IMG/VR virus record: IMGVR_UViG_3300047548_001236
Location: 218,856-282,855 of that record
DNA length: 64,000 bases
Direction: 5' to 3' (one strand)
Shown here: piece after piece, positions 17,963 through 62,853 of the stretch
Position numbering within the stretch: the stretch's first letter is position 1
Layout of the letters: every line of letters begins with the position of its first letter
Position numbers and translations under genes: made by a program
The notes under the pieces: model-generated
Databases searched by the model: none
Told to the model about the DNA's origin: nothing
What the model saw: the letters and a program-made list of their open reading frames with translations, nothing else

Positions 17963-18010
17963 ATTAGAACTCCTCTAATGTATAAATAGTTTCGCAATCT
18001 CTTTGCAAAA
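17963..18010 (-). promoter_or_regulatory. Tandem hairpin leader element (AGAGA loop plus GGAGU SD loop) of nadM-Nudix
   Basis: mRNA UUUUGCAA-AGAGA-UUGCGAAA CUAUUUAUAC AUUAGA-GGAGU-UCUAAU AUG. Confidence 0.8.
17981..17988 (+). promoter_or_regulatory. T4-type late promoter TATAAATA for the homing endonuclease
   Basis: Exact T4 late consensus 86 nt upstream of the endonuclease ATG. Confidence 0.6.
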
Positions 18011-18074
18011 CGTTCTTCGCGGTAGTACCAATACCCAAGAACTCTACGATAAACAGTTTAGGAGCATCGCAGCT

Positions 18075-49309: not shown

Positions 49310-49852
49310 TCACCAGAAAAATTTACCACCACCTGTTAGTCCAACCGATTTAGCGAAGTAAGGAAGTCTACAAGACCAATATGCGGCGGACGTCTTATCT
49401 GTCTGATCTGAACATTTATGCCGCGACGCAAAGTTTTTACGTGCCTCTGGATCGTTGATCTTTGCTGTCAACCCTGTTGTATCCCCAAACGTTACCTTCT
49501 TAATATTGCCTGTTGAAGGATCTTTGACGTACACGTAGAATTTCTTTGGTCCACCTCTACGGGGCTTGTTTAACGGAACCTTTTCTTCTTCACCCTCCAT
49601 CAAAGGTATATCGAGAGGAACCGCCCTGTCTTCGTAAAGTGCATACTCGCCAATATCTGATTCAAGTAATTCTTTCTCAAACCAGTCTTTTGTTTCATAC
49701 AAACCAACATCGTAAAGATAGCGAGCCTCGGTAAACAACGCATTGCTCATTTCTGAATGAGGCCTAAACACGTTTTCCGTGAATGGAATCTTTTTCGTCA
49801 AATGATATTCAATTGCACGCTCTAGCGTATGTTCTTTGAGGCTTCTCAACAT
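49310..49852 (-). CDS. Conserved T4-like protein with KKFYVYV...ARKNFASRHKC...AAYWSC domain
   Basis: Motif recalled from T4-like and other phage hypotheticals; lies in the head-protein cluster. Confidence 0.6.
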   Translation of the reverse strand: MLRSLKEHTLERAIEYHLTKKIPFTENVFRPHSEMSNALFTEARYLYDVGLYETKDWFEKELLESDIGEYALYEDRAVPLDIPLMEGEEEKVPLNKPRRGGPKKFYVYVKDPSTGNIKKVTFGDTTGLTAKINDPEARKNFASRHKCSDQTDKTSAAYWSCRLPYFAKSVGLTGGGKFFW

Positions 49853-50382
49853 TACGACTTCTTCCCTTTGTTACCGTAGGCTCCGCCTTCGTACCATGCA
49901 CACCAACCATTAGGGCTGATAGTTCCAGATACAGCGGTACACTTATTTGGTTCTCTCCACATTGTGCAATTGACACAGCGTTGACCGTTCTTTGGCTTGT
50001 CTTGATACTTAGCCTCAGCTTTTGATGCCTTTTTCTCTTCCGCGACTACCCTTGCTACAAATGGAAACATTGGCTGTAAATGAGCATATTCGTGTCCGAC
50101 ATATTCTATGTCGTCCGCTACAGGGTTCATTTCTTCTGCTGGCAACTCTTCGGATTGATCACCGCCGTTAGCCTTCATGTATGTGCATACTGAGACAAGG
50201 TAATCGGACGCGAGCGTCACTTTGCTTTCACCCCATCTTTCCATTGTTGCACCGGAGTCCAACATTGATATAATCTCTTGAGCTGCATTGACTGCCACTT
50301 GCAACTCTCTTTTAGACATGTCGTCTTGCTCTACTTTCGAGTCGCAAGCAACTTCATTCAGAACCTGCTTAAATGTCTTCAT
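49852..50382 (-). CDS. Capsid-targeted protein with C-terminal HiPIP (high-potential 4Fe-4S) domain
   Basis: N-terminus MKTFKQVLNE; C-terminus KASKAEAKYQDKPKNGQRCVNC-X8-C-X12-C with ISPNGWC; no Tat signal. Confidence 0.78.
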   Translation of the reverse strand: MKTFKQVLNEVACDSKVEQDDMSKRELQVAVNAAQEIISMLDSGATMERWGESKVTLASDYLVSVCTYMKANGGDQSEELPAEEMNPVADDIEYVGHEYAHLQPMFPFVARVVAEEKKASKAEAKYQDKPKNGQRCVNCTMWREPNKCTAVSGTISPNGWCAWYEGGAYGNKGKKS

Positions 50383-50400: not shown

Positions 50401-52092
50401 TCACGATTTATCTTCGATGTCGAGCGTCTTAGGATATCCCTTCTCGCCAGGGCGAAGCCTGCGAAGACCTTTTTCACGACGCTTCCTGATGTTGTACCAG
50501 AGTCCTTTGGGTTTATGCTTTTCCTCGACTACTTGTCCAGGCGTCTCTCTCTTGTATATATCTGTCAAACTGTCTGTGCCCCACTCTCTTTGGTCAGGAA
50601 TGCTTTCTTCTGGATCTAGAGACTCGGTGACGTCAAATGTGTTGAGATATGCCTTATGGCCTTTTGTCAGTCTGTATCTATTGTACAGCTTTTCAAGCTC
50701 TTTAGCTTTTTCAGGGTCAAGATTGTATTTACTCGTGACGGATCCCGCATCACCATCTATATCCGGCGTTGCTTCATAATCTTTGAGTGCTGCAAGCATG
50801 TTCTTTCTTTCAAGTTCACGCTTGATAATTGTCTGGATGGGATCGAGATCGTCCGCTTCATTCATTCTGTCACGAATATCAGCAAACCGTTTTGAAGCTC
50901 TCTTGTTGACATCGGCATGTCTTGCATTCGTCATCATTCTGTGATGTCTGACTGCGTCCACCTTCTTTTCACTTGCGATGACGGAACGCACTCTATCTGT
51001 ATTAGACGTCTCGAGAGCTTCGATCAGCTGATTTAGATCAGTAAGAACCTCAACACTCTCGAAAACAGCATCTGTGTAATTTTTGAAGGCCTCGTTAACA
51101 TGACCTCTGTGTCCTGTAGCCGATGCTGATAGACTAACATGGTGGGAGTGTGATCTGCTTAGACGTTCAGTTTCGACTTTACGAACGACGGGGAGCAGTC
51201 TCTTAGCAATTCGCTCGATCACTGCAGGTGGGATATTCATCAGACGAGCGTCAAGAGCGTTCTTTTCAACCACGGAAAGTTCTGCGTAATCCTTGTTACG
51301 CAGAATACGCGAGCGGATGATTTCAAGCGCTCTTTTACGGGCTCTTTCTCTAAGTTTTTCAGGGGATGCTCTGCGCTCTGCAGCTCTTTCACGTGCGATT
51401 TCAATTCGCTTCGCGTAGCGACGCATCGTCTGCGCCTTCTTAATCCGCTCTGAATACGGAATAGGACGTATCTTTTCTGTGAGGTATCCCTCAGACAAAC
51501 CGTCTAATTGCACCACGACAGCTTCAAATATATCTCTCGCTGATGGACGTAGCGGCATTGCCAACGATTGCTTGAACGAAGTGAAATCACCGCGAATTGC
51601 GTGTTCTGCGATTACATCGTATGACCCAGGATCGCTATATGGAACGATGTCTATTGATTCGAAACGCAGCTCATCACGGTGCATAGCTACTACGTTGGAA
51701 ACGTCATACGCTTCTTCTTGCATGCATACAATCACGACGCTGTTGTATTCGTCTTCGCAAACCTTTAGTGCTTCAAGTATGGTAGGAACAGCACTTGGAT
51801 ACACAATGTTTCCAAAAACGCTTTGGGACATACCAATCCGCTGTTGCTCATCAAGATACCCCTCAGAGACGTCACGGTTTGAAACAAACACATATGTATC
51901 TGCCTCGTACAGCTTTGCATACTTTTTCAGGGTTTCAACCAGACGTTGATCAGCGATAGAGGGAGGGGAATAGTCACCCATCGTCAACATCGCCTTGCTT
52001 TTCTTGTCTCTTTCGAGCGTAGGATTTACCTCGACATATTTTGATGGGCTGAACTTTTTTAGGACAACCTTTTGGATTTTCTTCTCGGTCAT
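50401..52092 (-). CDS. Large putative virion protein with degenerate cytidylyltransferase-like N-domain
   Basis: TMGDYSPPSIAD in place of GRFNPPTIGH; PTILEAL; IRGDFTSFKQSL; basic RMRR...ASPEKLRERA helix domain; many xxE sites; own late promoter. Confidence 0.6.
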   Translation of the reverse strand: MTEKKIQKVVLKKFSPSKYVEVNPTLERDKKSKAMLTMGDYSPPSIADQRLVETLKKYAKLYEADTYVFVSNRDVSEGYLDEQQRIGMSQSVFGNIVYPSAVPTILEALKVCEDEYNSVVIVCMQEEAYDVSNVVAMHRDELRFESIDIVPYSDPGSYDVIAEHAIRGDFTSFKQSLAMPLRPSARDIFEAVVVQLDGLSEGYLTEKIRPIPYSERIKKAQTMRRYAKRIEIARERAAERRASPEKLRERARKRALEIIRSRILRNKDYAELSVVEKNALDARLMNIPPAVIERIAKRLLPVVRKVETERLSRSHSHHVSLSASATGHRGHVNEAFKNYTDAVFESVEVLTDLNQLIEALETSNTDRVRSVIASEKKVDAVRHHRMMTNARHADVNKRASKRFADIRDRMNEADDLDPIQTIIKRELERKNMLAALKDYEATPDIDGDAGSVTSKYNLDPEKAKELEKLYNRYRLTKGHKAYLNTFDVTESLDPEESIPDQREWGTDSLTDIYKRETPGQVVEEKHKPKGLWYNIRKRREKGLRRLRPGEKGYPKTLDIEDKS

Positions 52093-52129
52093 GAGAACAC
52101 CTTTCACTGGATTTGAGATCTGTTTACAG

Positions 52130-52137
52130 TATTTATA
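52130..52137 (-). promoter_or_regulatory. T4-type late promoter TATAAATA for the head-protein/lysis run
   Basis: Exact consensus in the intergenic gap. Confidence 0.75.
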
Positions 52138-52140
52138 CTG

Positions 52141-52827
52141 TCAAGACTTTAGGTGTTTGTGAAAGGATGATATTGTAGAACCGTAAAAGGTATCTGCTTT
52201 ATTCCATATTGTCGATTGCCTTATCCATCCGATAGCTGGGGTCGGATCAACAACAGCAAGAGGAACGCGACTTCTTCTTTTCTTCATGAAAAAACGGTTG
52301 TCTATTGGACCACCACCTCCACCAGTCCTCAACTCGTCTAACAGAGATTGTGCTGTTTTAGGAGTCAGTGCGTACGCGTGAGCGCCGTTGTGATGATCGA
52401 TATCTATTATCTTTCTGGGAGGTCCGGCAGCTATGTGATCATACTTAGATGGGTCGTTAAGTTTATACCCCAACACAACAATTTTACCATCGGGAATGTT
52501 CATATTGATAGGATGTAACATCAAAGCATCATGTTCCAAAACAATAGCGCATTGCTGTGTTTCAGCAATGCGCTTCCATATTAATGCATGTGACACGGAA
52601 CAACAGGCTGCTTTGTCAATCTTGTCGTCGTTTATTCGGTGATCCATACTTCCCTGTAGGATTTCTAAACCCGTCGATGTCCACGCATTGTAACTTGTCA
52701 TGTTTTCTACGCCATCAAAGAACTCGTACTGAATGCCTACGCTTTCACATGATCTTGCGCACGTGTCAGCATATTCCCGTGACAGTGGCGACGTAATGCG
52801 AAGGATGTACGCCTTTTCTGGCCTCAT
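52141..52827 (-). CDS. Glycosyltransferase family 25 (paralogue 1)
   Basis: KAYIL, FFDG, AACCSVSHALIW, IVLEHDA, GAHAYAL. Confidence 0.8.
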   Translation of the reverse strand: MRPEKAYILRITSPLSREYADTCARSCESVGIQYEFFDGVENMTSYNAWTSTGLEILQGSMDHRINDDKIDKAACCSVSHALIWKRIAETQQCAIVLEHDALMLHPINMNIPDGKIVVLGYKLNDPSKYDHIAAGPPRKIIDIDHHNGAHAYALTPKTAQSLLDELRTGGGGGPIDNRFFMKKRRSRVPLAVVDPTPAIGWIRQSTIWNKADTFYGSTISSFHKHLKS

Positions 52828-52831
52828 CGAA

Positions 52832-53521
52832 TTACCTATAGTTGTTGTTGAAAGATTCGATGAACGGGTAGTTTAACGTTGACGATTCTTTCCATATTGT
52901 CGATTTTCTGATCCAACCAATTGCTGGAGTTGGGTCGGCAATTGAGAGAGGAACCTTTGTCCGTCTCATTTTCAAGAAAAAGCAATTGTCAACAGGAGTA
53001 TTAACTCCAATAGTATTTAGCTCGTTCAACATTATTGACGCGGTATTCCACGTGAGTGCATAAGCGTGCGCTCCTTCATGTCCATCGATACCTATTAGTT
53101 TGCGAGGCGGACCAGCCTTGACGTGGTCATAACGGTTCGGATCCTGTAGTTTATAACCGAGTGCGACAATCATGTTATCAGGAATATGAACCGTAACTGG
53201 GTGAAGCATGATTGCATCATGCTCTAACACGATGGCAACTTCCTTTCGTGTGGCTATTTTGTGCCACACCATTGCATGGCTGACTGTTGCACATGCAGCC
53301 TTATCGACTTTCCCCGATTTGTAGACGCCAAGCATCTTGACAGGAAAATGGCACATCATCCATGCATCATATGCTGTTTGATTCTCGATTCCGTCAAAGA
53401 ATTCGTATGGAAGACCAATCTTTTCGCATGATTTTACAGCCTCTGATGCATATTGCTGTGACAGTGGATCAGATATTCGAATAATGTATGCTTTTTCGGG
53501 GTACATAATATGAACGCTCAC
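52832..53521 (-). CDS. Glycosyltransferase family 25 (paralogue 2)
   Basis: KAYII, FFDG, ACATVSHAMVW, IVLEHDA, GAHAYAL; visibly similar to paralogue 1. Confidence 0.8.
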   Translation of the reverse strand: MSVHIMYPEKAYIIRISDPLSQQYASEAVKSCEKIGLPYEFFDGIENQTAYDAWMMCHFPVKMLGVYKSGKVDKAACATVSHAMVWHKIATRKEVAIVLEHDAIMLHPVTVHIPDNMIVALGYKLQDPNRYDHVKAGPPRKLIGIDGHEGAHAYALTWNTASIMLNELNTIGVNTPVDNCFFLKMRRTKVPLSIADPTPAIGWIRKSTIWKESSTLNYPFIESFNNNYR

Positions 53522-54213
53522 AGAGTTGTTGTTGATTTCAAGTTTTGAACTTGAGTATAGTAGGTTTTACTCACGGCCAAAAAATTACATAATTGTTGAC
53601 ACATAATTGCATCGTTTGGCCACAGACCGTATTTATAGCAGAGTTCAATCAGATGCTTTGCAGCAAACGGTTTGATGATGTATGCGGAATTGCCAGGCAG
53701 ACCTTGGGGAACCTCCTTACTAGCAAGCATTGGAGGACTCATCAGCTCATCTTTACTGTTCTGTACCATGTCGTGGTACGTCCTAAAAGCAAATGTTGCA
53801 TGCATTGGACTATTGATACCTATTACACCATATCTTGTTTCAAGCAGCGGTTCTGGATCTAGCTTATGCACAAACATTGCGTCATGTTCTAATACGAGGA
53901 TTGGCTCTTGTGTTTGCATGCATTTTTCCCACAATAGAAAATGACTCAGAGAACAAGCGACTCTTCTTTTAGGATCTCTACCACCGTAAGCGGTCTTTCT
54001 CATCTCGGTCCATGGATCTAACACAGAACCGACATCTGGATAATTCCATATCAGCTTTTTAGCCTTCATCAATCCGTCTACGTCAGGTGGCGTTACAGCT
54101 TGAAACCTTTCAACAGTAAACGCGTTACCAACACCTTTTGACGATGATAAAAGAGCATGGAACCCTTTCTCAGATATCTCATTACCGTTCATTACTATTG
54201 CATAAGCCTTCAT
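53518..54213 (-). CDS. Glycosyltransferase family 25 (paralogue 3)
   Basis: RFQAV, ACSLSHFLLW, LVLEHDA, GNSAYII, PNDA. Confidence 0.8.
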   Translation of the reverse strand: MKAYAIVMNGNEISEKGFHALLSSSKGVGNAFTVERFQAVTPPDVDGLMKAKKLIWNYPDVGSVLDPWTEMRKTAYGGRDPKRRVACSLSHFLLWEKCMQTQEPILVLEHDAMFVHKLDPEPLLETRYGVIGINSPMHATFAFRTYHDMVQNSKDELMSPPMLASKEVPQGLPGNSAYIIKPFAAKHLIELCYKYGLWPNDAIMCQQLCNFLAVSKTYYTQVQNLKSTTTL

Positions 54214-54216
54214 AAA

Positions 54217-54513
54217 TCAATCCTTGTTATCGAATAACCACTTTGCTTTATCGTCAACCCAAACATCGTACACGGGCTTTTTCATACGCAATTCGTGGTA
54301 TTTACATCCCCACTGTTTCAACTGCTTCTCGGTCAACTCCGAAAAGTCAAGACCTCTACTCATTCCTCGTGCTGTCCAATATATGATAGTGTTTCCTTCA
54401 TCGTAAAGCTGGTTTATACGATCGATTCTTTCTTGGATAGGCTGTGACTGTGTGTAATCGCCAGAAGGCGGTGAAAAACATATAGTCCCATCAATATCTA
54501 CAATGTAAATCAT
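54217..54513 (-). CDS. Small HAD-superfamily phosphatase (capsule/heptose-phosphate phosphatase-like)
   Basis: VDIDGT, YWTARG, MKKP.YDVWVDDKA. Confidence 0.8.
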   Translation of the reverse strand: MIYIVDIDGTICFSPPSGDYTQSQPIQERIDRINQLYDEGNTIIYWTARGMSRGLDFSELTEKQLKQWGCKYHELRMKKPVYDVWVDDKAKWLFDNKD

Positions 54514-54866
54514 CGCTGACTATCTCCTTTGAATACACGGTAGTTATCCTCGACAGAGTCAGGCGTCGAAACTTCCAAAATTGTACCAGCTTCAAGGCAT
54601 ATCAATTGGTGAGGCATTAAAGGAGGATTGTGCCATACGTCACCCACGTTAAGCGTTTTAACGTGTTGCTCTGCATTCGTGGTGTCAATATAACGAACTT
54701 CAAATTTCCCCTGAACAACATACCACGTTTCGTCCTTGACAGCATGGAAATGCATGGAGAACATTGCTCCTCGATTGAAGTTCAAAAACTTCGAACAATA
54801 TAGATCATTGCTGACCCATATGTTTTCAGAACCCCAGCCTTTTTCAACATATCCGGACAATCTCAT
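54510..54866 (-). CDS. Cupin, sugar isomerase-like
   Basis: VEKGWG.E, FSMHFHAVKDETWYV..G, PHQL, EVSTPDSVEDNYR. Confidence 0.8.
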   Translation of the reverse strand: MRLSGYVEKGWGSENIWVSNDLYCSKFLNFNRGAMFSMHFHAVKDETWYVVQGKFEVRYIDTTNAEQHVKTLNVGDVWHNPPLMPHQLICLEAGTILEVSTPDSVEDNYRVFKGDSQR

Positions 54867-55612
54867 AGACCCACCTCCTCTAATCTTGGGGCATATACGC
54901 CAACATGACGTACTGTCACTTCCGAAGCTCTCATTGCAAATTGTATTGATTGGCTCATGTCTTGCGTTGAGCAGAACATGTATGATAATGCTGCTAGGAA
55001 CGTATCACCAGCTCCACAAACATCATGCACTTCGACTTTTCTAGGGTAATATACTTCTGCTCCATAGACAACCTTTTCACCGCCGTATGTAACAACAGCA
55101 TCGTGATGATCGGACGTTCGAGCTTCCCACTCGATATGGTTGACCTTGAGACAAAAGCCGTCGAACTGTTTCAAGTCTGTCTTCTTTGTGTCGATAAATT
55201 TAGGACAAGAGTATTTCGATCCTATCACAGCAATATCTTCATATGATAGAAACCCTTTGTTGTAGTCAGATACCACCACACAATCGTACACATCGTCAGG
55301 AAGAGTGTTCAAATCAATGCGATGGTTTCCAAGTCTCTCATCGACCCTAAGCAGTTGTGTGTTTCTTTTTATATCAATATATCGTGTCTTCTTCTCGATC
55401 ACGGCACTGATCATAACGACATCACATCCTAGATTTGAAAGATTTAGCATTACATTGGACGCCATACCACCCAGCTCACGGCTATGATGCATGTCAAGTA
55501 TCGGAACAGGTGCTTCTGGACTTAGTCTGTTGACATTCCCATAATGGTAAACGTCGATACAACTATCGCCTATCAATAATACTTTGAATTGTGTTTGTTG
55601 TTGACTGTCCAT
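54863..55612 (-). CDS. hldA: Heptose-7-phosphate kinase (HldE/RfaE kinase domain, PfkB family)
   Basis: LIGDSCID.Y..G.V.RLSPEAPVP, GGMASNV..NL, SDYNKG, DVCGAGDTF. Confidence 0.85.
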   Translation of the reverse strand: MDSQQQTQFKVLLIGDSCIDVYHYGNVNRLSPEAPVPILDMHHSRELGGMASNVMLNLSNLGCDVVMISAVIEKKTRYIDIKRNTQLLRVDERLGNHRIDLNTLPDDVYDCVVVSDYNKGFLSYEDIAVIGSKYSCPKFIDTKKTDLKQFDGFCLKVNHIEWEARTSDHHDAVVTYGGEKVVYGAEVYYPRKVEVHDVCGAGDTFLAALSYMFCSTQDMSQSIQFAMRASEVTVRHVGVYAPRLEEVGL

Positions 55613-55967
55613 TGTTCCTCTCAAAATAAACTAGGCTTTCACTATATTCAGCTCCAACGACTGGACGACCTCTCCAGTCAGACCCAATCACTCTCACCGC
55701 GGGCTTGTGTTTCTTCAACAATTCGATCAACTGCTGATCCGAATCAAATTCTTCGACAATGTCTACAGGTTTCAACTGTTCCATAATTGCACGGCGAATG
55801 TTGATTGGGTTGATCGGACGACTCGGTCCCTTCGATTCAGCAATTCTACGATCAGAGTCCAGCCCTACAACTAATCGATCTCCAAGCCCTTTTGCGTATT
55901 TAAGAAGTTCAATGTGTCCTTCATGAAGAAGATCGAATGCTCCATTGCAAAATATCACTTTAGACAT
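55563..55967 (-). CDS. hldC: Heptose-1-phosphate adenylyltransferase (HldE/RfaE domain II)
   Basis: NGAFDLLHEGH, LVVGLDSD, KGPSRPIN, IGSDW, STTNTI. Confidence 0.85.
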   Translation of the reverse strand: MSKVIFCNGAFDLLHEGHIELLKYAKGLGDRLVVGLDSDRRIAESKGPSRPINPINIRRAIMEQLKPVDIVEEFDSDQQLIELLKKHKPAVRVIGSDWRGRPVVGAEYSESLVYFERNNGQSTTNTIQSIIDRR

Positions 55968-56574
55968 CGATGATCCTCACGTTGCGGTTACGGTACATTG
56001 CTTCTAACGCATAGTCCCAGAAGTTATGTCGTCGACGGTGCTCGCTGTTTAACAGAATCGTGCACGGGGTTCCTGCAGACATTGCTACCCAACTTGTTCC
56101 CGATGCTGCTCCAACGTGTTCTTGCGCATTCGCTACAGTGTCGAACAGCTGTTTTAGAGTCATGCCCTGTTGATGTGCATTGCTAAGGTCGATCGTTCGA
56201 CGGTTGCCAACATATTTAGACACATCCCCCACACTACGTGTGCTGTTGCGCGAATGTAGCTGCGTAGTAACATAATCGCCGACCGACTTAGTTGTCGTAT
56301 ACTGTACTGTGGGTATGTTGTTTTCCAAATACACTTGATCTGGATATAGCACTGTCGAGTGCGTTCCTCTAAGGAATTTCACTCTATACTTATCAGGATA
56401 TATCTGATTGCTAAGATCTTGAATTAACTTCACACCATATGCGTCAGGATCATCGACATACAAAGTAATATCCGATCCTATATACGCAAGGACAGAGCAT
56501 ACCAGAATGCTGTCGCCTAACTTCCATCCACCAAAACTGGGTCTACCTCTTGCTTCCAGTCTAAAGCTGTTCAC
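55960..56574 (-). CDS. GT9 (heptosyltransferase)-like glycosyltransferase, divergent
   Basis: N-terminal LGDSILV; C-terminal HVGAASGTSWVAMSAGTP resembling the GT9 DSG..H.A.A..P motif. Confidence 0.55.
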   Translation of the reverse strand: MNSFRLEARGRPSFGGWKLGDSILVCSVLAYIGSDITLYVDDPDAYGVKLIQDLSNQIYPDKYRVKFLRGTHSTVLYPDQVYLENNIPTVQYTTTKSVGDYVTTQLHSRNSTRSVGDVSKYVGNRRTIDLSNAHQQGMTLKQLFDTVANAQEHVGAASGTSWVAMSAGTPCTILLNSEHRRRHNFWDYALEAMYRNRNVRIIDV

Positions 56575-57278
56575 AACAACCTCACATCGTAACCTTTTTC
56601 AATCCATCTCTTTGCAACACCCGTTTGCTTATCAGCTGGAATGTATACGTGGACGTCTTTTGGATCCTTGACGCAATATGCAAAGTGCGTTAGACCGCTG
56701 TCAATACCAACGTGAAACTCGGCGTGCTCAAGCATATATGCAACTGTTGCTAACCCCATACTATCACGTCCACCGATATTGATATAGGCGTAATTGGGAT
56801 ACCAACGACGCAGAATTGAATCGATCATATGTGTCGTGTAACCACACCTTTTCGAAACGCCGGTATACTGGAACGTGACGTATTTCTTAGGAGGGAGAGT
56901 GCATTTTCTCAACTGTGTTTTATCTACTGTCAGATATGGAGCTGTAGGGTAATTGTCCAACACAGTCCGACCGCTAACTTGTGCTAACGTGTCGTTGTCA
57001 TACGACTTGGATATATATGATAGATATCTTCCTTGGTCGATGACTAACCGATCAAGGACGTCGGAAGCATTACACAGCTTTGCAAACTCTTTGTACGCGT
57101 CATTGATGAACGGTACGAGTAGCTTGCTGTTTGCAGGACAGCCGTTGGCAAAGTTGCTGACAGTTGCAACCATATCTCCGAAACCTCGAGGGGTCGTGAC
57201 AAGAACTTTTTGTTGGGTGGAGGCGGGACGGAAAAAATCCGTCCCATCCGAGAAACCGCGTAGAATAAAGTCGTTCAC
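56571..57278 (-). CDS. GT9 (heptosyltransferase)-like glycosyltransferase
   Basis: RGFGDMV; HVGIDSGLTHFA; GTG start overlapping the upstream TGA. Confidence 0.65.
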   Translation of the reverse strand: MNDFILRGFSDGTDFFRPASTQQKVLVTTPRGFGDMVATVSNFANGCPANSKLLVPFINDAYKEFAKLCNASDVLDRLVIDQGRYLSYISKSYDNDTLAQVSGRTVLDNYPTAPYLTVDKTQLRKCTLPPKKYVTFQYTGVSKRCGYTTHMIDSILRRWYPNYAYINIGGRDSMGLATVAYMLEHAEFHVGIDSGLTHFAYCVKDPKDVHVYIPADKQTGVAKRWIEKGYDVRLL

Positions 57279-57880
57279 GGAACTAGCCTTAGCTGGTGTT
57301 GACCATATTGGGCATATGCTCTGCTTGCCCAATCCAAGAAATTGGTGGGTTGGAAGTTTGACAGAGCTGGGTCCACATACCAGTCTTCAAAATAGATTCC
57401 ATGCATATCCAGACGTCGAACGTCTTTAATTACACGAAGGTATCCTTGTGCTGTAAGAAGTTCGTAAGCCTTGATCTGGTATACGTCATTAGTTGAGTAC
57501 TTGTCATGCTCAAACGTGATACATTTAGTGCGGATTCCTGCATCAACGATACGCTGCAATGCTTTGAATGTGAATTCTGGCGGTTCGATATCAAGCGATA
57601 TGTAATCGAAGAATTTTTCGTTTAAACCTTCATAATCGAACGTCAGCGCATCAGCAATATGGAATTCATCCTTCGTTCTCCACGAAGAGTTCCACATTTC
57701 CCTGTATTTCTCTTCAATCTCTATCGATACCCCAGACCACCCGTTCTTTTCGAGCAAAGCTGTGTTACTGTTTTTTTCAGGTTGGTATGCTCCTATTTCC
57801 AACCACCTTTTGCCTTTGCCACACACTTCGAGAGCAAAAAGATCTTGCAGTGCGTGCGTTGAGCTTCTAAATGAATTCAT
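57275..57880 (-). CDS. FkbM-like SAM-dependent methyltransferase
   Basis: WLEIGA, SNTALLE..GWSGVSIE, DYISLDIE, ITFEHD, FEDWYV. Confidence 0.75.
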   Translation of the reverse strand: MNSFRSSTHALQDLFALEVCGKGKRWLEIGAYQPEKNSNTALLEKNGWSGVSIEIEEKYREMWNSSWRTKDEFHIADALTFDYEGLNEKFFDYISLDIEPPEFTFKALQRIVDAGIRTKCITFEHDKYSTNDVYQIKAYELLTAQGYLRVIKDVRRLDMHGIYFEDWYVDPALSNFQPTNFLDWASRAYAQYGQHQLRLVP

Positions 57881-58371
57881 CGTTTAACTCCCATAGCTGC
57901 GAACGAGTTGTAAAGGTCGACCTCCGACACGAAAATTTTCTCCCATCCTCTTGCTTCAAAATAATCGCGGATAAACTGAGGAAGAAGAATATTGACGTGC
58001 TTTCTGTTGTTCCATGGTCTCCAGTATTCTTGTGAGTAGTGTGGCAGATATAGGAACATTACACCGCCTGGCCTGATCCTCGTGGACCAGTAATCAAGCA
58101 CTCCAACCCAATCTGGAAGATGCTCTAAACAATGTGAAGAGAAGATGTAGTCGTATTGGTGGTCTGGAAGATTGTTTGCATGATATTCGTCATCGACAGA
58201 CAGGTCAATCAACCTTGCTCCTGGAAATTTCCACTGCTCGTTTCCACCCCCGATATCTAGCCCCTCGCCGCGTAGAACCTCTTTTGCAAAAGGCATTATA
58301 AATCTAGCTGCATTACCGTTTGTTTGAAAAGCAGGATATTGGCCTTCTTTGAAAACTACTGTATCGATCAT
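57877..58371 (-). CDS. Class I SAM-dependent methyltransferase
   Basis: GLDIGGG, YDYIFSSHCLEHL, IRPGGVMFLYLP. Confidence 0.82.
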   Translation of the reverse strand: MIDTVVFKEGQYPAFQTNGNAARFIMPFAKEVLRGEGLDIGGGNEQWKFPGARLIDLSVDDEYHANNLPDHQYDYIFSSHCLEHLPDWVGVLDYWSTRIRPGGVMFLYLPHYSQEYWRPWNNRKHVNILLPQFIRDYFEARGWEKIFVSEVDLYNSFAAMGVKR

Positions 58372-59159
58372 CTTAGTCCTTCCATGTTTAATACTTGCTC
58401 GACATTCTCACCTTTTGACGGTAGATGATCCTTCAAGAAGAAGTGTATAAAATACGAGTCTTTTAGGTAAAAATCTTCGATCCCTTTGTATAGCGCATTC
58501 CATCTCCAGTTGAGGCGCTTGTATTTGACACCGTCTTTACGAATCCAGTAGTTTAACAAAGTTTGATCTGTAGACCATTTCCAGAATCCAAGACCATCAA
58601 TGAAACGCTTGAATTCTGGACGAGCAAGAAACTCTGCAGGTGTCTGACCGTTGAGGTACTTCTTGATCTCGCTGCTGAAAATCATCAGACCCATATTCAT
58701 AAACTCGTAGCCACGTTCGTTTTTCTTCCAATCGATGTCGGTTAGCGTCTCGTACTGTTCTCTCGAGTAAGCTGAAATCTTGCCAAAATATGCTCTGGTG
58801 AGCGGCATCTCTCTCTCGACCACAGCTCCAAATTCCGAACCGTCGTCCAGCTCAGCAAATATATTTGGTGCATTTTCTCGGATGTAGATATCCGAATCGA
58901 TGATAGCTATTCTATCATACTGATCGAGATATGAAAACGCATTTTCCTTCTCGTATATAGGTAGATAGCCCAGTCTTCCATATGAAGCTGAGCTGCGATT
59001 TGTTACCTTGATGTCTGGAACTATTTTTAGGATGGGTTCTCGCTGAACAATATGATCAAACCCATGCTTTTTACAATATCTTGCTACCGATGCAACACAG
59101 TAGTCGTACAGTTTCAGTTTTGGTCCTACATAGACCTGGTATATCATACACTTCTTCAT
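58368..59159 (-). CDS. GT-A fold glycosyltransferase (GT8/GT34-like)
   Basis: YCKKHG, AIIDSDIYI (DxD), NMGLM, DQTLLN, WRWNA, FIHF; start moved to MKKCMIY (GGAG SD). Confidence 0.75.
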   Translation of the reverse strand: MKKCMIYQVYVGPKLKLYDYCVASVARYCKKHGFDHIVQREPILKIVPDIKVTNRSSASYGRLGYLPIYEKENAFSYLDQYDRIAIIDSDIYIRENAPNIFAELDDGSEFGAVVEREMPLTRAYFGKISAYSREQYETLTDIDWKKNERGYEFMNMGLMIFSSEIKKYLNGQTPAEFLARPEFKRFIDGLGFWKWSTDQTLLNYWIRKDGVKYKRLNWRWNALYKGIEDFYLKDSYFIHFFLKDHLPSKGENVEQVLNMEGLR

Positions 59160-59179
59160 TATCTCTCCCATCATAGAAA

Positions 59180-59205
59180 GAAAGGTGGAAGTAACTCCAC
59201 CTTTC
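59180..59205 (-). terminator. 10-bp hairpin with U-rich tail in the leader of the glycosylation island
   Basis: GAAAGGTGGA-GTTACT-TCCACCTTTC followed by TTTCTAT on the minus strand. Confidence 0.55.
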
Positions 59206-59216
59206 ACAATCACAAG

Positions 59217-59224
59217 TATTTATA
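59217..59224 (-). promoter_or_regulatory. T4-type late promoter TATAAATA for the glycosylation island
   Basis: Exact consensus in the intergenic gap. Confidence 0.7.
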
Positions 59225-59676: not shown

Positions 59677-60984
59677 TCAAGTAATCTCTTGCCAAGCAAT
59701 CGATCCAAGAGCATCGTCGCCCGCTGCTGCACCTGTAGCAATCAAGCTGAATACTGTGCCTTTGTTAGACGCGGCAAATGGATTACGTTCCAACTGATAC
59801 GAGAATACATCAGCAGTCTTGAGATTTGTCGTTTGACCACCAGCGCCCGACGCAACGTTGACAAATCCCTGAGCAAGAGTTCTTCCGCCTGTGATTGCAG
59901 TGGCGGTGATATCGTATTCAATAGACGACTCGGATGCCACGTTTGCCCATTGAGCTCCTGTAAGCGTTCCGCCAACAACAATCTTCCAATTGTAACGTGT
60001 GTTATTCCCCACACCAAAGAATTCAACATCTGTCGGAACCACAATTGCATCAGCTCTCGTGTCTTTCAAACGTATTGATATGATTGGTGTGAATGTTCCA
60101 GCTGTAGGAATGTCCTTGGGTGTCATCAATGGTATGCCAATTGTGAAGGAACGGCCCCGAAGGTCGTAACCACCTTCGGATATCACAGACGTACAAACAA
60201 TTTTTGCAGTGCTAGGCACGGCCGTGTTTGCAGTGTTTTCAATCTCCATGCGTACAGGCAAGCACGCTGTTCCCATGTACGTAGTTTCAATCCTATTAGC
60301 GTGGTGGAATGAATGACAGTGAATCAGCTTACCGTCAATCACAAAACCGTTACGGACTGTGCCTAGTCCCAACCATTCGATGTCGGTAAACATGATTTGT
60401 GCTTTTGTGATGTCGAGAACAAGTCCGCTAGGACCATCCCCATCAAGAGGATCGACATTCCACTGCGACTGCGGAACTTTGGTTTCTCTTAGTGAGCCGC
60501 TTGAGAATGAACGCTCAACGAAGAACAACTCGTTGTTTGCAAGTTCAAGAAATATACCGTTCTGCTCTCCAAAATATCCATAACGCTGGCGCAAACCGTT
60601 TTGTGGAGGGGCGAGAACAAACGTTTGTAGAATTTGTAGTGATTTGCCAGGCTGGTACGCAAACACTCTAGACGATTCTCTTTTGACAACGTCACCTGCG
60701 GTTGTACCAACATTGCAAAGGACTATACTAGAATTTGGGTCGTGAACAGTGTTAGCCGCTCCAGCAGTGAACTGACTTATTCTTCCGTTGTCTTGGAACC
60801 GATGAAATGAATCAAATAAAGTGAACGGATCTGACGTTCGAGCTCTACCAAATGCATCAACGGCCATACCACTTGGGTTGGCTGGGCCAATCATATTACC
60901 GTATTGATCGGCCAACATGACAACTTCAAAAAGGGTCTTGTTGTCACCGAGATATCTATACGTATCTTTTCTATACTGAGCCAT
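59677..60984 (-). CDS. Putative virion structural protein (beta-rich)
   Basis: VDAFGRARTSDPFTLFDS, YQPGKS, RYGYFGEQNGIFLE, WLGLGTVRNGF pattern recalled from T4-like structural proteins; Gly/Thr/Ala-rich. Confidence 0.6.
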   Translation of the reverse strand: MAQYRKDTYRYLGDNKTLFEVVMLADQYGNMIGPANPSGMAVDAFGRARTSDPFTLFDSFHRFQDNGRISQFTAGAANTVHDPNSSIVLCNVGTTAGDVVKRESSRVFAYQPGKSLQILQTFVLAPPQNGLRQRYGYFGEQNGIFLELANNELFFVERSFSSGSLRETKVPQSQWNVDPLDGDGPSGLVLDITKAQIMFTDIEWLGLGTVRNGFVIDGKLIHCHSFHHANRIETTYMGTACLPVRMEIENTANTAVPSTAKIVCTSVISEGGYDLRGRSFTIGIPLMTPKDIPTAGTFTPIISIRLKDTRADAIVVPTDVEFFGVGNNTRYNWKIVVGGTLTGAQWANVASESSIEYDITATAITGGRTLAQGFVNVASGAGGQTTNLKTADVFSYQLERNPFAASNKGTVFSLIATGAAAGDDALGSIAWQEIT

Positions 60985-61248: not shown

Positions 61249-62853
61249 TCATACGCGTATTGTGCATTTACCATTGATGACGTTGATAAGCTGACGCTGT
61301 CCGTTTTCATAGACTAGACAGCATGTTTGGGTCCAAGATGTGGGACCTCTGTTGTAACCAAGATCCAACTTCGTCATGGTTCCCACGCGGAACACACCTC
61401 TATGAATAGCAGCAGAATGCGCATGACCAATAACACAGTTTCCATATGTCTTCTCAAGAGTTGCGAGCGAAGGTTTTGCACCATTCATCCCAAGATCGCC
61501 GTGCGAACCACATTCAACGTCACCGATCTTGTAGCTGGAATCTCGAGTAAGAAAAGTCCAGTGTTCTGGAACACGTTGCTGCACAACCTCAAATCCTCGT
61601 TTGAGGACGTCTTTTTTCTCGAAAAGAGCTGTAGCTATCTTGAGGCTTGTGTAGTGGTTTGTGGGATCGCTGATGTAGCGGCCTTCTTGAAGATATCGTG
61701 TTAGGAATTCGTCGTGGTTTGACTTGACAATTACCACTTCCCGAGGATTGAGGTAGCCGTCAATGTAATCAATCAAACCATATGTGTCTAATAGTTCTTG
61801 ATATAGATCGTGATATCCTTGCATCTCCCTAATTGCACGAGCAGCAATTGTTGTTTCGTGATGGTTGATACTAAACCCGTCAAAGATATCGTGCAGGAAC
61901 ACGCGATTGATCTCCATCGTCGATGCAAGCTCGAGAACGGGTTTGAGAGCTTCATCATCGACGTTGACAGCATGCAAATCGCCAAACACGAGGTTTGTCT
62001 CAACTGCAATGGTAGATCCATCAGGATTATATTGCGTTCCGAGATCAATGAACGATCCATCACTATCTGCTTGGATTTGACGGAAATGGAACACACGATC
62101 GTCCTGGATCTCAATGACAATCGCTCCAATTACGTGATCTTTTTCTGCGATATAAGACAAGCGCTTTGATACGAACGTCTCTGTGTAGTATCGCGGAAGC
62201 GTGCAAGCTCCTGTCGTCATGATCGAGTAATTCGTGCCACGGTTGTTGCCAGAAGGCACAAACTCCAAGAACTGTTTCGTTCCTGCAAACACGAACGATC
62301 CGTCTCTGTTTCCAATGCGAGACAGTCCGGTGATCGGACGGATCTGCTTCGCTGATACCTGAATGCTACACAAGCTGATGTTGTTGTTCAACAACGTATC
62401 CTTCGATACAAACATGTACTTGGGGTCAGAGAATACACTAGCAAAAACGGCTGTCTTATTTTCGAAGCTATTGGTGACACTTTCACAAGGCATGACAACA
62501 ATCTGTGCATCGTGCTCCTTGCTATATGTGTCAAGAGCTTTAAGGAATCCTTCATGTGGGGGTGAATCAGCAACAGCAGTTGTTACGATGAACGTTTTTG
62601 TGCTGTTTACACTTGCGCTACGTTGATCTGAGAACACATCATCTAATGACATGAACATATTGGACAGATCAGAGGAGTGCTCTTGATCCATGTGTTGATG
62701 AAGCTTCTCGATTCCACCAAAGCGTGAGCGTATGGCATCACGTGTAATGCCATACTTCAAGAAGTCTGCGTATGTCGGTCTTGTGTTGGTATCGGCAGCG
62801 ATGGTCAAATAATGTTGTATTATTTGCTGCCGTTTATCGTTTAGAGTTGTCAT
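61249..62853 (-). CDS. Calcineurin-like metallophosphoesterase with N-terminal HTH-like segment and uncharacterised middle domain
   Basis: FGDLH, HDIFDG, SNHDE, SHGD, IGHAH motifs; N-terminal RPTYADF..YGITRDAIRSRFGG. Confidence 0.65.
   Translation of the reverse strand: MTTLNDKRQQIIQHYLTIAADTNTRPTYADFLKYGITRDAIRSRFGGIEKLHQHMDQEHSSDLSNMFMSLDDVFSDQRSASVNSTKTFIVTTAVADSPPHEGFLKALDTYSKEHDAQIVVMPCESVTNSFENKTAVFASVFSDPKYMFVSKDTLLNNNISLCSIQVSAKQIRPITGLSRIGNRDGSFVFAGTKQFLEFVPSGNNRGTNYSIMTTGACTLPRYYTETFVSKRLSYIAEKDHVIGAIVIEIQDDRVFHFRQIQADSDGSFIDLGTQYNPDGSTIAVETNLVFGDLHAVNVDDEALKPVLELASTMEINRVFLHDIFDGFSINHHETTIAARAIREMQGYHDLYQELLDTYGLIDYIDGYLNPREVVIVKSNHDEFLTRYLQEGRYISDPTNHYTSLKIATALFEKKDVLKRGFEVVQQRVPEHWTFLTRDSSYKIGDVECGSHGDLGMNGAKPSLATLEKTYGNCVIGHAHSAAIHRGVFRVGTMTKLDLGYNRGPTSWTQTCCLVYENGQRQLINVINGKCTIRV

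What the first reader, a model, noticed from the sequence alone, without database searches (positions are those of the whole stretch)
52141..59224. Late-expressed 7-kb glycan island with a split ADP-heptose pathway, six glycosyltransferases and two methyltransferases
Seen: twelve tightly coupled genes: GT8/34-like, two MTases, two GT9-like, heptose adenylyltransferase, heptose kinase, cupin, HAD phosphatase and three GT25 paralogues, behind TATAAATA. No GmhA isomerase or HldD epimerase is in the window. Known: HldE/GmhB make ADP-heptose, GT9 enzymes transfer heptose, GT25 enzymes extend LOS, and large cyanomyoviruses carry LPS-like gene clusters. Inference: late timing favours glycosylation of the virion (capsid or fibres) with a methylated heptose-containing glycan over early receptor masking. 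The cupin could replace GmhA or make an unusual sugar.
Basis: partly seen in the sequence, partly recalled or inferred. Interest (0 to 1): 0.62.

Follow-up and report, generated by a model that had tools for sequence, protein, structure and literature searches.

The report
Phage heptose-glycan operon without GmhA
A 283-kb freshwater T4-like phage carries a twelve-gene operon, behind a late-promoter motif, that should make an activated seven-carbon sugar and build a methylated glycan; a small, highly conserved cupin protein appears to replace the usual first enzyme of that pathway.

Summary
Window 52141-59224 (minus strand) carries twelve overlapping genes: GT8, two methyltransferases, two compact GT9-like transferases, an HldC-like nucleotidyltransferase, an HldA-like kinase, a cupin, a 98-aa HAD and three GT25 enzymes. 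An intergenic TATAAATA precedes them. In this genome the same motif precedes sheath, prohead protease, scaffold and neck genes.

The complete 282,855-bp genome has no SIS isomerase (GmhA) and no SDR epimerase (HldD). It also lacks psbA, and its capsid protein is closest to rhizobial and pelagibacter T4-like phages. It is therefore not evidently a cyanophage.

The trio of nucleotidyltransferase, kinase and cupin is the invariable core of a cassette found in more than 570 viral contigs. It is already known, uncharacterised, as cyanophage "LPS genes" T4-GC 304/305/307. It usually comes with an HldD-like epimerase and often with GmhB-like or other HAD phosphatases. It never comes with an SIS isomerase. 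A few bacterial MAGs carry hldE-hldD-cupin-gmhB operons.

I infer that the cupin is the missing sedoheptulose-7-phosphate isomerase (about 0.5). Its best structural match, however, is the CapF epimerase domain.

The glycan's acceptor is unresolved: virion proteins about 0.4, host envelope about 0.35. No RNA data exist. This is a new variant of a known kind.

The parts
59217..59224 (-). TATAAATA, T4-type late-promoter motif in front of the operon
   Evidence: Sequence read. Genome-wide enrichment and intergenic placement. The same motif precedes sheath, prohead protease, scaffold, head-tail adaptor and baseplate tube cap genes.
59180..59205 (-). 11-bp stem-loop followed by a T-rich run, between the promoter motif and the first start codon. 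It could be a leader hairpin or a weak terminator for upstream transcripts.
   Evidence: function not tested
58368..59174 (-). G1, GT8-family glycosyltransferase with a DSD motif. The ORF is open to GTG 59213; the likely start is ATG 59174 or 59159.
   Evidence: Pfam PF01501 7e-6, above the cut-off. 51-58% identical homologues in islands L021, L034 and L057.
57877..58371 (-). G2, class I SAM methyltransferase
   Evidence: Pfam Methyltransf_23 4e-11. 51-66% identical homologues in L021, L030, L034 and L057.
57275..57880 (-). G3, FkbM-type methyltransferase-like protein
   Evidence: No Pfam or PDB sequence hit. ESM Atlas features 0.98 and structure TM 0.83-0.85 to viral clusters carrying PF05050.
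56571..57278 (-). G4, compact GT9-like glycosyltransferase. The ORF is open to TTG 57332; GTG 57278 overlaps the G3 stop as GTGA.
   Evidence: Pfam GT9 7e-5, 22.6 bits against 22. TIGR02193 8e-5 on the C-terminal motif. Start codon read.
55960..56574 (-). G5, miniature (204 aa) GT-B protein of GT9 type
   Evidence: AF2 pLDDT 94. Foldseek top hits are TibC and WaaC. VIA Z 11.0 WaaC, 10.8 WaaF, 9.6 TibC, 9.2 3TOV. Small family: 29 representatives among 1.84 billion proteins.
55563..55967 (-). G6, HldC-like heptose-1-phosphate nucleotidyl(adenylyl)transferase with HxGH and STT motifs
   Evidence: TIGR02199 3e-32, below the cut-off. phrog_7878 9e-45. Motifs read.
54863..55624 (-). G7, HldA-like PfkB kinase (253 aa, shorter than the ~315 aa of HldA)
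   Evidence: TIGR02198 1e-36, below the cut-off. Best PDB hit is HldA 4E84, 3.6e-17. phrog_8133 2e-79.
54510..54866 (-). G8, 118-aa metal cupin; candidate sedoheptulose-7-phosphate isomerase
   Evidence: Pfam Cupin_1/2 and near-threshold MannoseP_isomer. Invariant H41, E46, H86 plus K9, K26, K44, R110. AF2 pLDDT 95. Present in 47 of 48 complete cassettes.
54217..54513 (-). G9, 98-aa minimal HAD phosphatase (DIDGT, T47, K77/78, DD86-87)
   Evidence: Pfam HAD_PNKP 1.7e-3, TIGR01689 2e-5, phrog_1238 1e-29. Motifs read.
53518..54213 (-). G10, GT25 glycosyltransferase
   Evidence: Pfam PF01755 4.6e-12. 36-54% identical homologues in L021, L030, L034 and L057.
52832..53521 (-). G11, GT25 glycosyltransferase, tandem paralogue of G12
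   Evidence: Pfam 1.8e-8. 56% identical to G12.
52141..52827 (-). G12, GT25 glycosyltransferase, last gene of the operon
   Evidence: Pfam 4.1e-10.
52130..52137 (-). Next TATAAATA, 22 nt before the 568-aa gene 50401-52107. It marks the start of the next late unit and so the lower edge of the island.

Best explanation
The twelve genes form one translationally coupled operon. It is transcribed from a T4-type late promoter in a freshwater T4-like phage whose host is unknown.

[quoted passage not shown] The cupin G8 isomerises sedoheptulose-7-phosphate to D-glycero-D-manno-heptose-7-phosphate, taking the place of the absent SIS enzyme GmhA. This step is inferred (about 0.5).
2. The HldA-like kinase G7 phosphorylates O1.
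3. The mini-HAD G9 removes the 7-phosphate.
4. The HldC-like transferase G6 adds AMP.

There is no HldD, so the donor stays in the D,D form.

Two compact GT9-like enzymes then transfer heptose. One GT8 and three GT25 enzymes add hexoses from host UDP-sugars, and two methyltransferases cap the glycan. All twelve proteins are soluble. There is no flippase, polymerase or ligase, so assembly takes place in the cytoplasm on an acceptor that is reachable there.

I consider phage structural proteins the most likely acceptor (about 0.4). Host envelope glycolipid is nearly as likely.

What is shown: gene content, motif integrity, the statistics of the late-promoter motif, and the conservation pattern. 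What is inferred: the cupin's reaction, the nucleotide used, the order of transfers, the timing and the acceptor.
For: Family assignments and intact catalytic motifs.

No SIS or SIS_2 and no SDR epimerase in the complete genome.

The kinase alignment finds at least 571 IMG/VR contigs. In 48 loci with at least 4 kb on both sides, the counts are NT 48, cupin 47, HldD-like SDR 42 (TIGR02197 7.6e-66) and HAD 28. The HADs come from three unrelated subfamilies, including GmhB (PRK08942 5e-40). Every canonical step is therefore recognisable except the isomerase, and the only other constant gene is the cupin.

No SIS gene is present in P-SSM2 or S-SSM7, or in the eight partial viral contigs searched. 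Their so-called 'phosphoheptose isomerase' is the mini-HAD.

Cyanobacterial hosts of cassette-bearing phages have no heptose in their LPS (PMC4390846). Those phages must therefore supply the isomerase themselves.

E. coli lacking gmhB is near wild type because other phosphatases substitute, whereas strains lacking gmhA or hldE are deep-rough (PMC9454879). This matches a patchy HAD and a constant cupin.

The cupin is the most conserved protein of the cassette (up to 73% identity, against about 53% for the kinase). It keeps a metal triad and four invariant basic residues. It has near-threshold PMI hits (PF01050 1.9e-4, TIGR01479 7e-4) and structural matches to cupin phosphomannose and D-lyxose/mannose isomerases (Z 14.0-14.6).

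The cupin persists here and in 6 of 48 loci without any SDR. This argues against a role that needs a keto-sugar partner.

Bacterial MAG contigs carry hldE(fused)-hldD-cupin-gmhB operons, and 4 of 5 such genomes have no GmhA-like gene.

Late timing: motif statistics and the genes the motif precedes.

Link to structural genes: a virion structural gene with its own TATAAATA lies just upstream. In related phages the cassette abuts gp13/14/15 in 12 of 86 loci and proteins of at least 700 aa in 28 of 86.

No transmembrane segments in any of the twelve proteins.
Against: No biochemical or expression data exist for any member of the cassette, and no RNA run holds this DNA.

The cupin's best structural match is the CapF cupin domain, a nucleotide-sugar C3-epimerase (Z 16.0, against 14.6 for the isomerases). 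In most loci the cupin sits next to the SDR, as in CapF. The cupin fold alone does not identify a reaction.

The kinase and the NTase score far below the NCBIfam equivalog cut-offs (126 against 345 bits and 111 against 181 bits). Neither the sugar nor the nucleotide is proven.

One MAG with the cupin operon also has a GmhA-like gene (182 bits). The host of this phage is unknown and may supply GmhA.

GT8, GT9 and GT25 together are the classical LOS/LPS-core enzyme set, which points to a lipid acceptor.

TATAAATA is not conserved before the cassette in related phages. No collagen-like or otherwise obvious acceptor protein was found.
Confidence: 0.4

Rival explanations
1. Host-envelope remodelling. 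The same operon makes ADP-heptose, but the GT9, GT8 and GT25 enzymes extend or replace the core oligosaccharide of nascent host LPS/LOS at the inner face of the cytoplasmic membrane. Host MsbA and Lpt then export it. The altered receptors block superinfection or keep progeny from re-adsorbing to infected cells and debris.
For: GT8 + GT9 + GT25 is the canonical LOS/LPS-core set (established knowledge of Neisseria and Haemophilus LgtC, LgtB/Lic2A and RfaC/F). G5 is structurally nearer to WaaC and WaaF (Z 11.0, 10.8) than to the protein heptosyltransferase TibC (9.6). LOS-type assembly needs no flippase or polymerase, which fits the gene content. This is the standing hypothesis for cyanophage and pelagiphage clusters (PMC1079782; PMC7029224).
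Against: A late-promoter motif and a lytic T4-like life style leave little time for new LPS to reach the surface. Cyanobacterial hosts of related cassettes have neither Kdo nor heptose in their core, so the classical acceptor is missing there. The GT9-like proteins are a third shorter than LPS heptosyltransferases.
Confidence: 0.35
2. The cupin is a tailoring enzyme, not the isomerase. Heptose-7-phosphate comes from the host's GmhA. The cupin epimerises or otherwise modifies the nucleotide-heptose (CapF- or WbuC-like), giving an unusual heptose.
For: The best structural match is the CapF cupin domain (Z 16.0, rmsd 1.8 A, 109 residues). TIGR04366 WbuC cupin 1.2e-5. The cupin is usually adjacent to the SDR. 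One MAG has both the cupin operon and a GmhA-like gene.
Against: This genome has no SDR at all to generate a keto intermediate, and 6 of 48 loci keep the cupin without the SDR. The SDR is clearly HldD-like (7.6e-66), and HldD needs no partner. Cyanophage hosts lack heptose and cyanophage genomes lack SIS, so an isomerase would still be missing. The HxH...E...H metal site and four invariant basic residues fit a phosphosugar isomerase.
Confidence: 0.3
3. The cassette activates a different sugar by the same chemistry (for example a hexose: isomerase, anomeric kinase, 6-phosphatase, NTase), or the island is drifting 'stuffer' DNA.
For: Kinase and NTase are below the equivalog cut-offs. The cupin has PMI-like hits. 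Sullivan et al. 2010 raised the stuffer idea (PMC3037559).
Against: HldA, HldC, HldD and GmhB are the best hits for four separate genes across the cassette family, and GT9-like genes co-occur. All catalytic motifs are intact, no frame is broken, and the cupin is up to 73% conserved over at least 571 contigs. This excludes drift.
Confidence: 0.08
4. The glycosyltransferases modify phage DNA (hypermodified bases).
For: Phage GTs do this in T-even phages (established knowledge). In some related loci a dCMP deaminase lies beside the cassette.
Against: DNA-modifying GTs belong to other families and act early or in mid infection. Here the motif is late, and the families are GT8, GT9 and GT25. A search for a hydroxymethylase was not done.
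Confidence: 0.03

Closest known systems
Cyanomyovirus 'LPS gene clusters' (P-SSM2, S-SSM7, S-SM2; T4-GC 304, 305, 306, 307, 308)
   Same: Homologous NTase, kinase, cupin and mini-HAD (36-45% identity for the kinase; PHROG hits 9e-45, 2e-79, 3e-40, 1e-29). They are co-directional and tightly packed, and accompanied by GT9-like enzymes, methyltransferases and other sugar genes. The function is equally uncharacterised (PMC1079782, PMC3037559).
   Different: There is no HldD-like epimerase (GC 308) and no carbamoyltransferase. The order is cupin-HAD rather than HAD-cupin. A GT8 and three GT25 enzymes are added. The genome lacks psbA and is from fresh water. The closest full-island relatives are four uncultured contigs, L021, L030, L034 and L057.
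Bacterial ADP-L-glycero-beta-D-manno-heptose pathway (GmhA, HldA/HldE, GmhB, HldC, HldD)
   Same: A PfkB kinase with the HldA N-terminal signature, a cytidylyltransferase-fold NTase with rfaE domain II as its best hit, and a HAD phosphatase. HldA and HldC as separate genes occur in many bacteria.
   Different: The SIS isomerase and the SDR epimerase are absent from the whole genome. A cupin is present instead. The kinase is about 60 residues shorter. The phosphatase is a 98-aa HAD of another subfamily.
GT9 heptosyltransferases (WaaC, WaaF; protein O-heptosyltransferases TibC/AAH)
   Same: G5 has a GT-B fold with GT9 enzymes as its top eight structural matches. G4 carries the GT9 C-terminal nucleotide-sugar motif.
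   Different: 204 and about 235 aa, against 320-400 aa. Sequence profiles do not reach significance for G5. The acceptor is unknown.
Phage and virus virion glycosylation (mycobacteriophage capsid/tail glycosylation; chlorovirus capsid glycans)
   Same: Virus-encoded soluble glycosyltransferases act in the cytoplasm. The gene position next to structural genes and the late-promoter motif fit (PMC11256854 mentions the mycobacteriophage case).
   Different: No glycan has been shown on any T4-like marine or freshwater phage. Here a sugar-nucleotide pathway is encoded as well. This is a resemblance by analogy only.
CapF (S. aureus) cupin domain and cupin-type phosphomannose / D-lyxose isomerases
   Same: Same small metal-binding cupin barrel (Z 16.0 and 14.0-14.6).
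   Different: 11-22% identity. CapF's cupin is fused to an SDR and acts on a UDP-4-keto sugar, whereas this genome has no SDR. No substrate data exist.

Membership tests
Canonical ADP-heptose pathway | SIS-fold sedoheptulose-7-phosphate isomerase GmhA | tested here: not met
   PF13580 and PF01380 give no match in the complete genome, while the controls ring.
Canonical ADP-heptose pathway | Heptose-7-phosphate kinase (HldA / HldE domain I) | tested here: inconclusive
   TIGR02198 is the best hit (1e-36) but scores 126 bits against a cut-off of 345. Best PDB hit is HldA 4E84 at 3.6e-17. GAGD and the N-terminal signature are intact.
Canonical ADP-heptose pathway | Heptose-1,7-bisphosphate 7-phosphatase GmhB (HAD-IIIA) | tested here: inconclusive
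   G9 is a HAD with all four motifs, but of another mini-HAD subfamily (TIGR01689 2e-5, TIGR01662 8e-4). True GmhB-like genes occupy the same place in 21 related loci.
Canonical ADP-heptose pathway | Heptose-1-phosphate adenylyltransferase (HldC / HldE domain II) | tested here: inconclusive
   TIGR02199 is the best hit (3e-32) at 111 bits against a cut-off of 181.5. The next best is TagD at 1e-17. The HxGH motif is present.
Canonical ADP-heptose pathway | ADP-heptose 6-epimerase HldD | tested here: not met
   PF01370 gives no match in the genome. It is present in 42 of 48 related cassettes.
Canonical ADP-heptose pathway | Product is ADP-glycero-manno-heptose | not testable with these tools
   Needs enzyme reconstitution and MS or NMR.
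T4-like phage 'LPS/heptose cassette' (T4-GC 304/305/307/308) | Adjacent NTase, kinase and cupin homologues | tested here: met
   phrog_7878 9e-45, phrog_8133 2e-79, phrog_7851 3e-40. The same triad is present in 47-48 of 48 complete loci.
T4-like phage 'LPS/heptose cassette' (T4-GC 304/305/307/308) | HldD-like epimerase (GC 308) in the cassette | tested here: not met
   Absent from the whole genome.
GT9 heptosyltransferases | Pfam PF01075 above the gathering score | tested here: inconclusive
   G4 scores 22.6 against 22 bits, over the C-terminal motif only. G5 has no hit, and only 1 of 29 members of its family has a weak one.
GT9 heptosyltransferases | GT-B fold closest to solved GT9 enzymes | tested here: met
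   G5: Z 11.0 WaaC, 10.8 WaaF, 9.6 TibC, 9.2 3TOV, with 174-177 of 204 residues aligned. G4 was not folded.
GT9 heptosyltransferases | Full-size two-domain enzyme (about 320-350 aa) using ADP-heptose | tested here: not met
   The length criterion fails (204 and about 235 aa). Donor use is not testable here.
GT25 (LOS beta-1,4-glycosyltransferases) | Pfam PF01755 above the gathering score | tested here: met
   46.6, 35.0 and 40.3 bits against a cut-off of 24.
T4-type late transcription unit | TATAAATA at an intergenic site just upstream, the same motif as before virion genes | tested here: met
T4-type late transcription unit | Late sigma (gp55/gp33) in the genome, and late RNA accumulation | not tested
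   No search for gp55/gp33 was run. No RNA run holds this DNA.
Virion glycosylation systems | Glycan covalently attached to capsid or tail proteins | not testable with these tools
   Needs purified virions and glycoproteomics.

The most novel reading that the evidence does not exclude
The 118-aa cupin is a previously unrecognised, non-SIS sedoheptulose-7-phosphate isomerase. It makes hundreds of aquatic phages (and a few bacteria) autonomous for ADP-heptose. In this phage the heptose is used late in infection, by miniature GT9 enzymes, to O-glycosylate virion proteins with a methylated heptose-hexose glycan. That would be the first virion glycosylation system in T4-like phages.
Probability: 0.18. 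Interest if true: 0.75.

Novelty: new variant of a known kind. Interest (0 to 1): 0.5.

Why it matters
Heptose-related 'LPS genes' have been listed in cyanophage genomes since 2005 without any assigned role, and were even suspected of being stuffer DNA.

This work shows that the NTase-kinase-cupin triad is an invariable core found in more than 570 viral contigs. It also shows that the public 'phosphoheptose isomerase' label belongs to a HAD phosphatase, and that the only unassigned constant gene coincides with the only missing step. Together these turn the clusters into a concrete, cheaply testable pathway hypothesis: a non-orthologous replacement of GmhA.

Cyanobacterial hosts contain no heptose. 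Any heptose found in infected cells or virions of cultured carriers would therefore be phage-made, which makes the acceptor question (virion or cell surface) directly answerable.

ADP-heptose is also an innate-immune signal in animals and a drug-target pathway in Gram-negative bacteria, so an alternative first enzyme has general biochemical interest.

Tried and rejected
1. Nucleotide searches against 50,697 phage records found no near match and only short fragments at 69-78% identity. There is no close sequenced relative.

2. The idea that GT25 enzymes (the collagen galactosyltransferase family) act on collagen-like fibres was rejected. No G-X-Y run of six or more repeats exists in any of the 444 predicted proteins.

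3. hhalign of the G5 family against two phage GT9-like alignments was not significant (probability 0.3-1.2%). The GT9 assignment for G5 rests on the fold only.

4. Conservation of the late motif before the cassette in related loci was not found (6 of 86). My simple ORF calling makes this a rough test.

5. A complementarity test (SIS present where the cupin is missing) was uninformative. The five contigs are 1-11% fragments, and the 'missing' cupin of L057 was an artefact of my ORF selection.

6. A phylogenetic profile across the phylum of MAG G006 found the cupin in only 1 of 151 genomes. It is sporadic there, so no anticorrelation with GmhA could be measured.

7. Expression: no RNA run holds the stretch. 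Reads laid were DNA contigs only. They confirm the sequence at about 170x in the probable source sample, and identical pieces appear in three other studies, but they say nothing about transcripts.

8. Cupin function from structure: the fold search lists isomerases, epimerases, dioxygenases and decarboxylases within 2 Z units of each other. It does not decide the reaction.

9. Complex prediction was not used. Enzyme-acceptor contacts are transient, and I have no specific acceptor candidate beyond gene neighbourhood.

10. The DNA-modification alternative was not tested. No search for a hydroxymethylase was made.

Full report
THE GENOME

The window is the last 64 kb of a 282,855-bp IMG/VR virus record that CheckV rates as complete. 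It encodes a T4-type major capsid protein (Pfam Gp23, 1.8e-146). Its closest relatives, at 64-67% identity, are Sinorhizobium phiM12/phiN3, Stenotrophomonas DLP_6, Methylophilales Melnitz and Pelagibacter HTVC008M.

It has no psbA. The DNA is held by freshwater and wastewater metagenomes, at about 170x in the probable source sample. It is therefore a large freshwater T4-like phage of unknown host, not demonstrably a cyanomyovirus. One neighbouring virion protein (59677-60984) is nevertheless most similar, at 50%, to proteins of cyanophages.

CHECKING THE OBSERVATION

Twelve minus-strand ORFs fill 52141-59213 with 4-8 nt overlaps or 3-4 nt gaps. The assignments are:

| Gene | Assignment | Evidence |
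|---|---|---|
| G1 | GT8 | Pfam 7e-6, above cut-off |
| G2 | Methyltransf_23 | 4e-11 |
| G3 | FkbM-like methyltransferase | ESM Atlas only: features 0.98, structure TM 0.83-0.85 |
| G4 | Marginal GT9 | 22.6 bits against 22 |
| G5 | 204-aa GT9-like protein | No sequence-family hit; AF2 model pLDDT 94; Z 11.0 WaaC, 10.8 WaaF, 9.6 TibC, 9.2 a Veillonella GT9. The top eight matches are all GT9 |
| G6 | HldC-like | TIGR02199 3e-32 |
| G7 | HldA-like | TIGR02198 1e-36; best PDB hit Burkholderia HldA |
| G8 | Cupin | |
| G9 | 98-aa HAD with all four motifs | |
| G10-G12 | GT25 | Above cut-off; G11 and G12 are 56% identical tandem copies |

None of the twelve proteins has a membrane-spanning stretch. 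The whole genome has no SIS or SIS_2 domain and no SDR epimerase, while the control genomes ring.

THE PROMOTER

TATAAATA lies at 59217-59224, in the short gap after a small upstream ORF. The genome holds 46 copies, against about 17 expected from composition. Twenty-seven of them lie wholly or partly in the 6% of the DNA that is non-coding, mostly 0-40 nt before a same-strand start.

The genes they precede include the head-tail adaptor, tail sheath, prohead protease, scaffold and baseplate tube cap. They also include two homing endonucleases and the virion structural gene just upstream of the island. That is the behaviour of a T4-type late promoter. The inference of late transcription is therefore reasonable, but it remains an inference, because no RNA run holds this DNA.

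A stem-loop with a T-rich tail (59180-59205) lies between the motif and the first ATG. Its role is unknown. A second TATAAATA at 52130-52137 starts the next unit, the 568-aa gene, and bounds the island.

WHAT THE CASSETTE IS

A kinase alignment finds at least 571 IMG/VR contigs. I analysed 86 loci, including P-SSM2 and S-SSM7. In the 48 loci with at least 4 kb on each side, the counts are as follows:

| Gene | Loci (of 48) | Note |
|---|---|---|
| NTase | 48 | |
| Cupin | 47 | |
| SDR | 42 | Clearly HldD-like: TIGR02197 7.6e-66 |
| HAD phosphatase | 28 | Three unrelated subfamilies, one true GmhB (PRK08942 5e-40) |
| GT9-like | 17 | |
| Carbamoyltransferase | 14 | |

This is the set that Sullivan et al. 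noted as co-occurring 'LPS genes' T4-GC 304, 305, 307 and 308, of unknown function and possibly stuffer DNA (PMC3037559; PMC1079782).

Four steps of the canonical ADP-heptose pathway are thus recognisable by homology somewhere in the cassette family. The fifth, the isomerase, never is. No SIS gene exists in this genome, in P-SSM2, in S-SSM7, or in the eight partial viral contigs searched. The gene annotated 'phosphoheptose isomerase' in public records (phrog_1238, PSSM2_311) is in fact the mini-HAD.

THE CUPIN

The cupin is the only constant gene without an assigned step, and it is the most conserved protein of the cassette (up to 73% identity). Its features:

- It keeps H39/H41/E46/H86, the classical cupin metal site, and four invariant basic residues.
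- It scores just below threshold on the phosphomannose-isomerase families (PF01050 1.9e-4, TIGR01479 7e-4).
- Its AF2 model (pLDDT 95) matches cupin phosphomannose isomerases of Thermococcus (Z 14.6) and D-lyxose/mannose isomerases (Z 14.0).
- The best match, however, is the cupin domain of CapF, a nucleotide-sugar C3-epimerase (Z 16.0).

Converting fructose-6-P to mannose-6-P is the hexose analogue of converting sedoheptulose-7-P to D-glycero-D-manno-heptose-7-P. The isomerase reading is therefore chemically natural.

Three further observations favour it over a CapF-like role:

- This genome, and 6 of 48 loci, keep the cupin without any SDR that could make a keto-sugar.
- Cyanobacterial LPS contains no heptose (PMC4390846), so cyanophages with the cassette must bring their own isomerase.
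- In E. coli the phosphatase step is replaceable while gmhA and hldE are not (PMC9454879). That mirrors a patchy HAD and a constant cupin.

Bacterial MAG contigs of 150-357 kb carry hldE(fused)-hldD-cupin-gmhB operons, and four of five such genomes show no GmhA-like gene. One does, and the cupin is sporadic in its phylum (1 of 151 genomes), so this support is modest.

No paper in the searchable library links a cupin to sedoheptulose isomerisation. I put the isomerase reading at about 0.5 and the tailoring-enzyme reading at about 0.3.

THE REST OF THE ISLAND AND THE ACCEPTOR

The GT8, the MTase, the GT9-like genes and the GT25 genes recur together with the core in four uncultured contigs, L021, L030, L034 and L057 (36-66% identity). 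There they lie between different flanking genes. The extended island is therefore a mobile, variable module.

All the enzymes are soluble, and there is no flippase, polymerase or ligase. Assembly is therefore stepwise in the cytoplasm, on one of three possible acceptors: nascent lipid A-core, phage proteins, or (unlikely) DNA.

For virion proteins:
- the late motif;
- the structural gene next door;
- the position of the cassette beside gp13/14/15 in 12 related loci and beside very large proteins in 28 of 86;
- the lack of a heptose/Kdo core in the cyanobacterial hosts of related phages;
- the precedents of TibC-type protein heptosylation and mycobacteriophage virion glycosylation (my own knowledge; PMC11256854).

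For the host envelope:
- the GT8/GT9/GT25 combination is the classical LOS set;
- G5 is slightly nearer to WaaC and WaaF than to TibC;
- this is the standing hypothesis in the literature.

I found no collagen-like or other obvious acceptor. My estimate is virion about 0.4, host envelope about 0.35, other about 0.25.

VERDICT

The island is a new variant of a known but uncharacterised kind of phage gene cluster. It lacks both GmhA and HldD, carries miniature HAD and GT9 enzymes, and has a conserved cupin that probably supplies the first step. The hypotheses are directly testable with cultured relatives.

Noticed in passing
window 49852-50382 (-): A 176-aa protein with a C-terminal HIPIP (high-potential iron-sulfur protein) domain (Pfam 1.5e-5, above cut-off). 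This is an unusual redox protein for a phage genome. It lies two genes downstream of the island.
   Followed up: no
window 50401-52107 (-): A 568-aa gene directly after the island, with its own TATAAATA (52130-52137). Its N-terminal half hits PHROGs named 'cytidyltransferase' (phrog_3041 7e-14; phrog_23027 3e-21), but it has no Pfam or NCBIfam hit and no HxGH motif. Its C-terminal half is highly charged. Whether it belongs functionally to the island is unknown.
   Followed up: partly
L001 9749-10093 (P-SSM2 PSSM2_311) and phrog_1238 / phrog_7851: Public annotations appear wrong. The 'phosphoheptose isomerase' of cyanophages is a mini-HAD phosphatase (DxDGT motif, HAD family hits). The 'cysteine dioxygenase' is the conserved cassette cupin. 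Neither P-SSM2 nor S-SSM7 has any SIS-domain gene.
   Followed up: yes
window 59180-59205 (-): An 11-bp stem-loop plus T-rich run lies between the late-promoter motif and the first start codon of the operon. It would be in the 5' leader of late transcripts and could also terminate read-through from the upstream structural gene.
   Followed up: no
window 52546-52574 (-): A 12-bp perfect inverted repeat with 7 GC pairs inside the coding region of the last GT25 gene (G12). The terminator scan flagged it. It is probably coincidental with coding, but it is the strongest hairpin in the 15 kb scanned.
   Followed up: no
window 53630-53637 (-): A further TATAAATA inside G10, 108 nt before the G11 start. 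It may be an internal late promoter for the duplicated GT25 pair, or chance.
   Followed up: no
G000:C1:74898-75326 (-), outside the window: A second cytidylyltransferase-fold gene in the genome matches the cassette NTase profile (7e-26). It may belong to NAD or another nucleotide pathway.
   Followed up: no
window 18003-18794 (+) and L092 6032-6751: Two homing-endonuclease genes are each preceded by an intergenic TATAAATA, as seen for some mobile endonuclease genes of T4.
   Followed up: partly
L095, L096, L097 (MAG contigs labelled Chitinophagales, Caulobacter, Polynucleobacter): These 23-30 kb 'bacterial' MAG contigs carry phage-type cassettes (cupin 69-73% identical; in L097 with carbamoyltransferase and a GT9-like gene). 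They are probably phage contigs binned into MAGs.
   Followed up: no
L012 11075-14323: A 1082-aa multidomain protein beside the cassette in a related contig combines several glycosyltransferase domains and a methyltransferase domain (PHROG hits). In the ESM Atlas, FkbM-like domains resembling G3 are also fused to TPR, DUF6445/2OG-oxygenase and radical-SAM/SPASM domains in viral proteins.
   Followed up: no
window 61249-62853 (-): A 534-aa protein upstream of the structural gene hits phrog_1745 'DNA transfer protein' (9e-101), with a weak metallophosphoesterase match. It has no Pfam hit.
   Followed up: no
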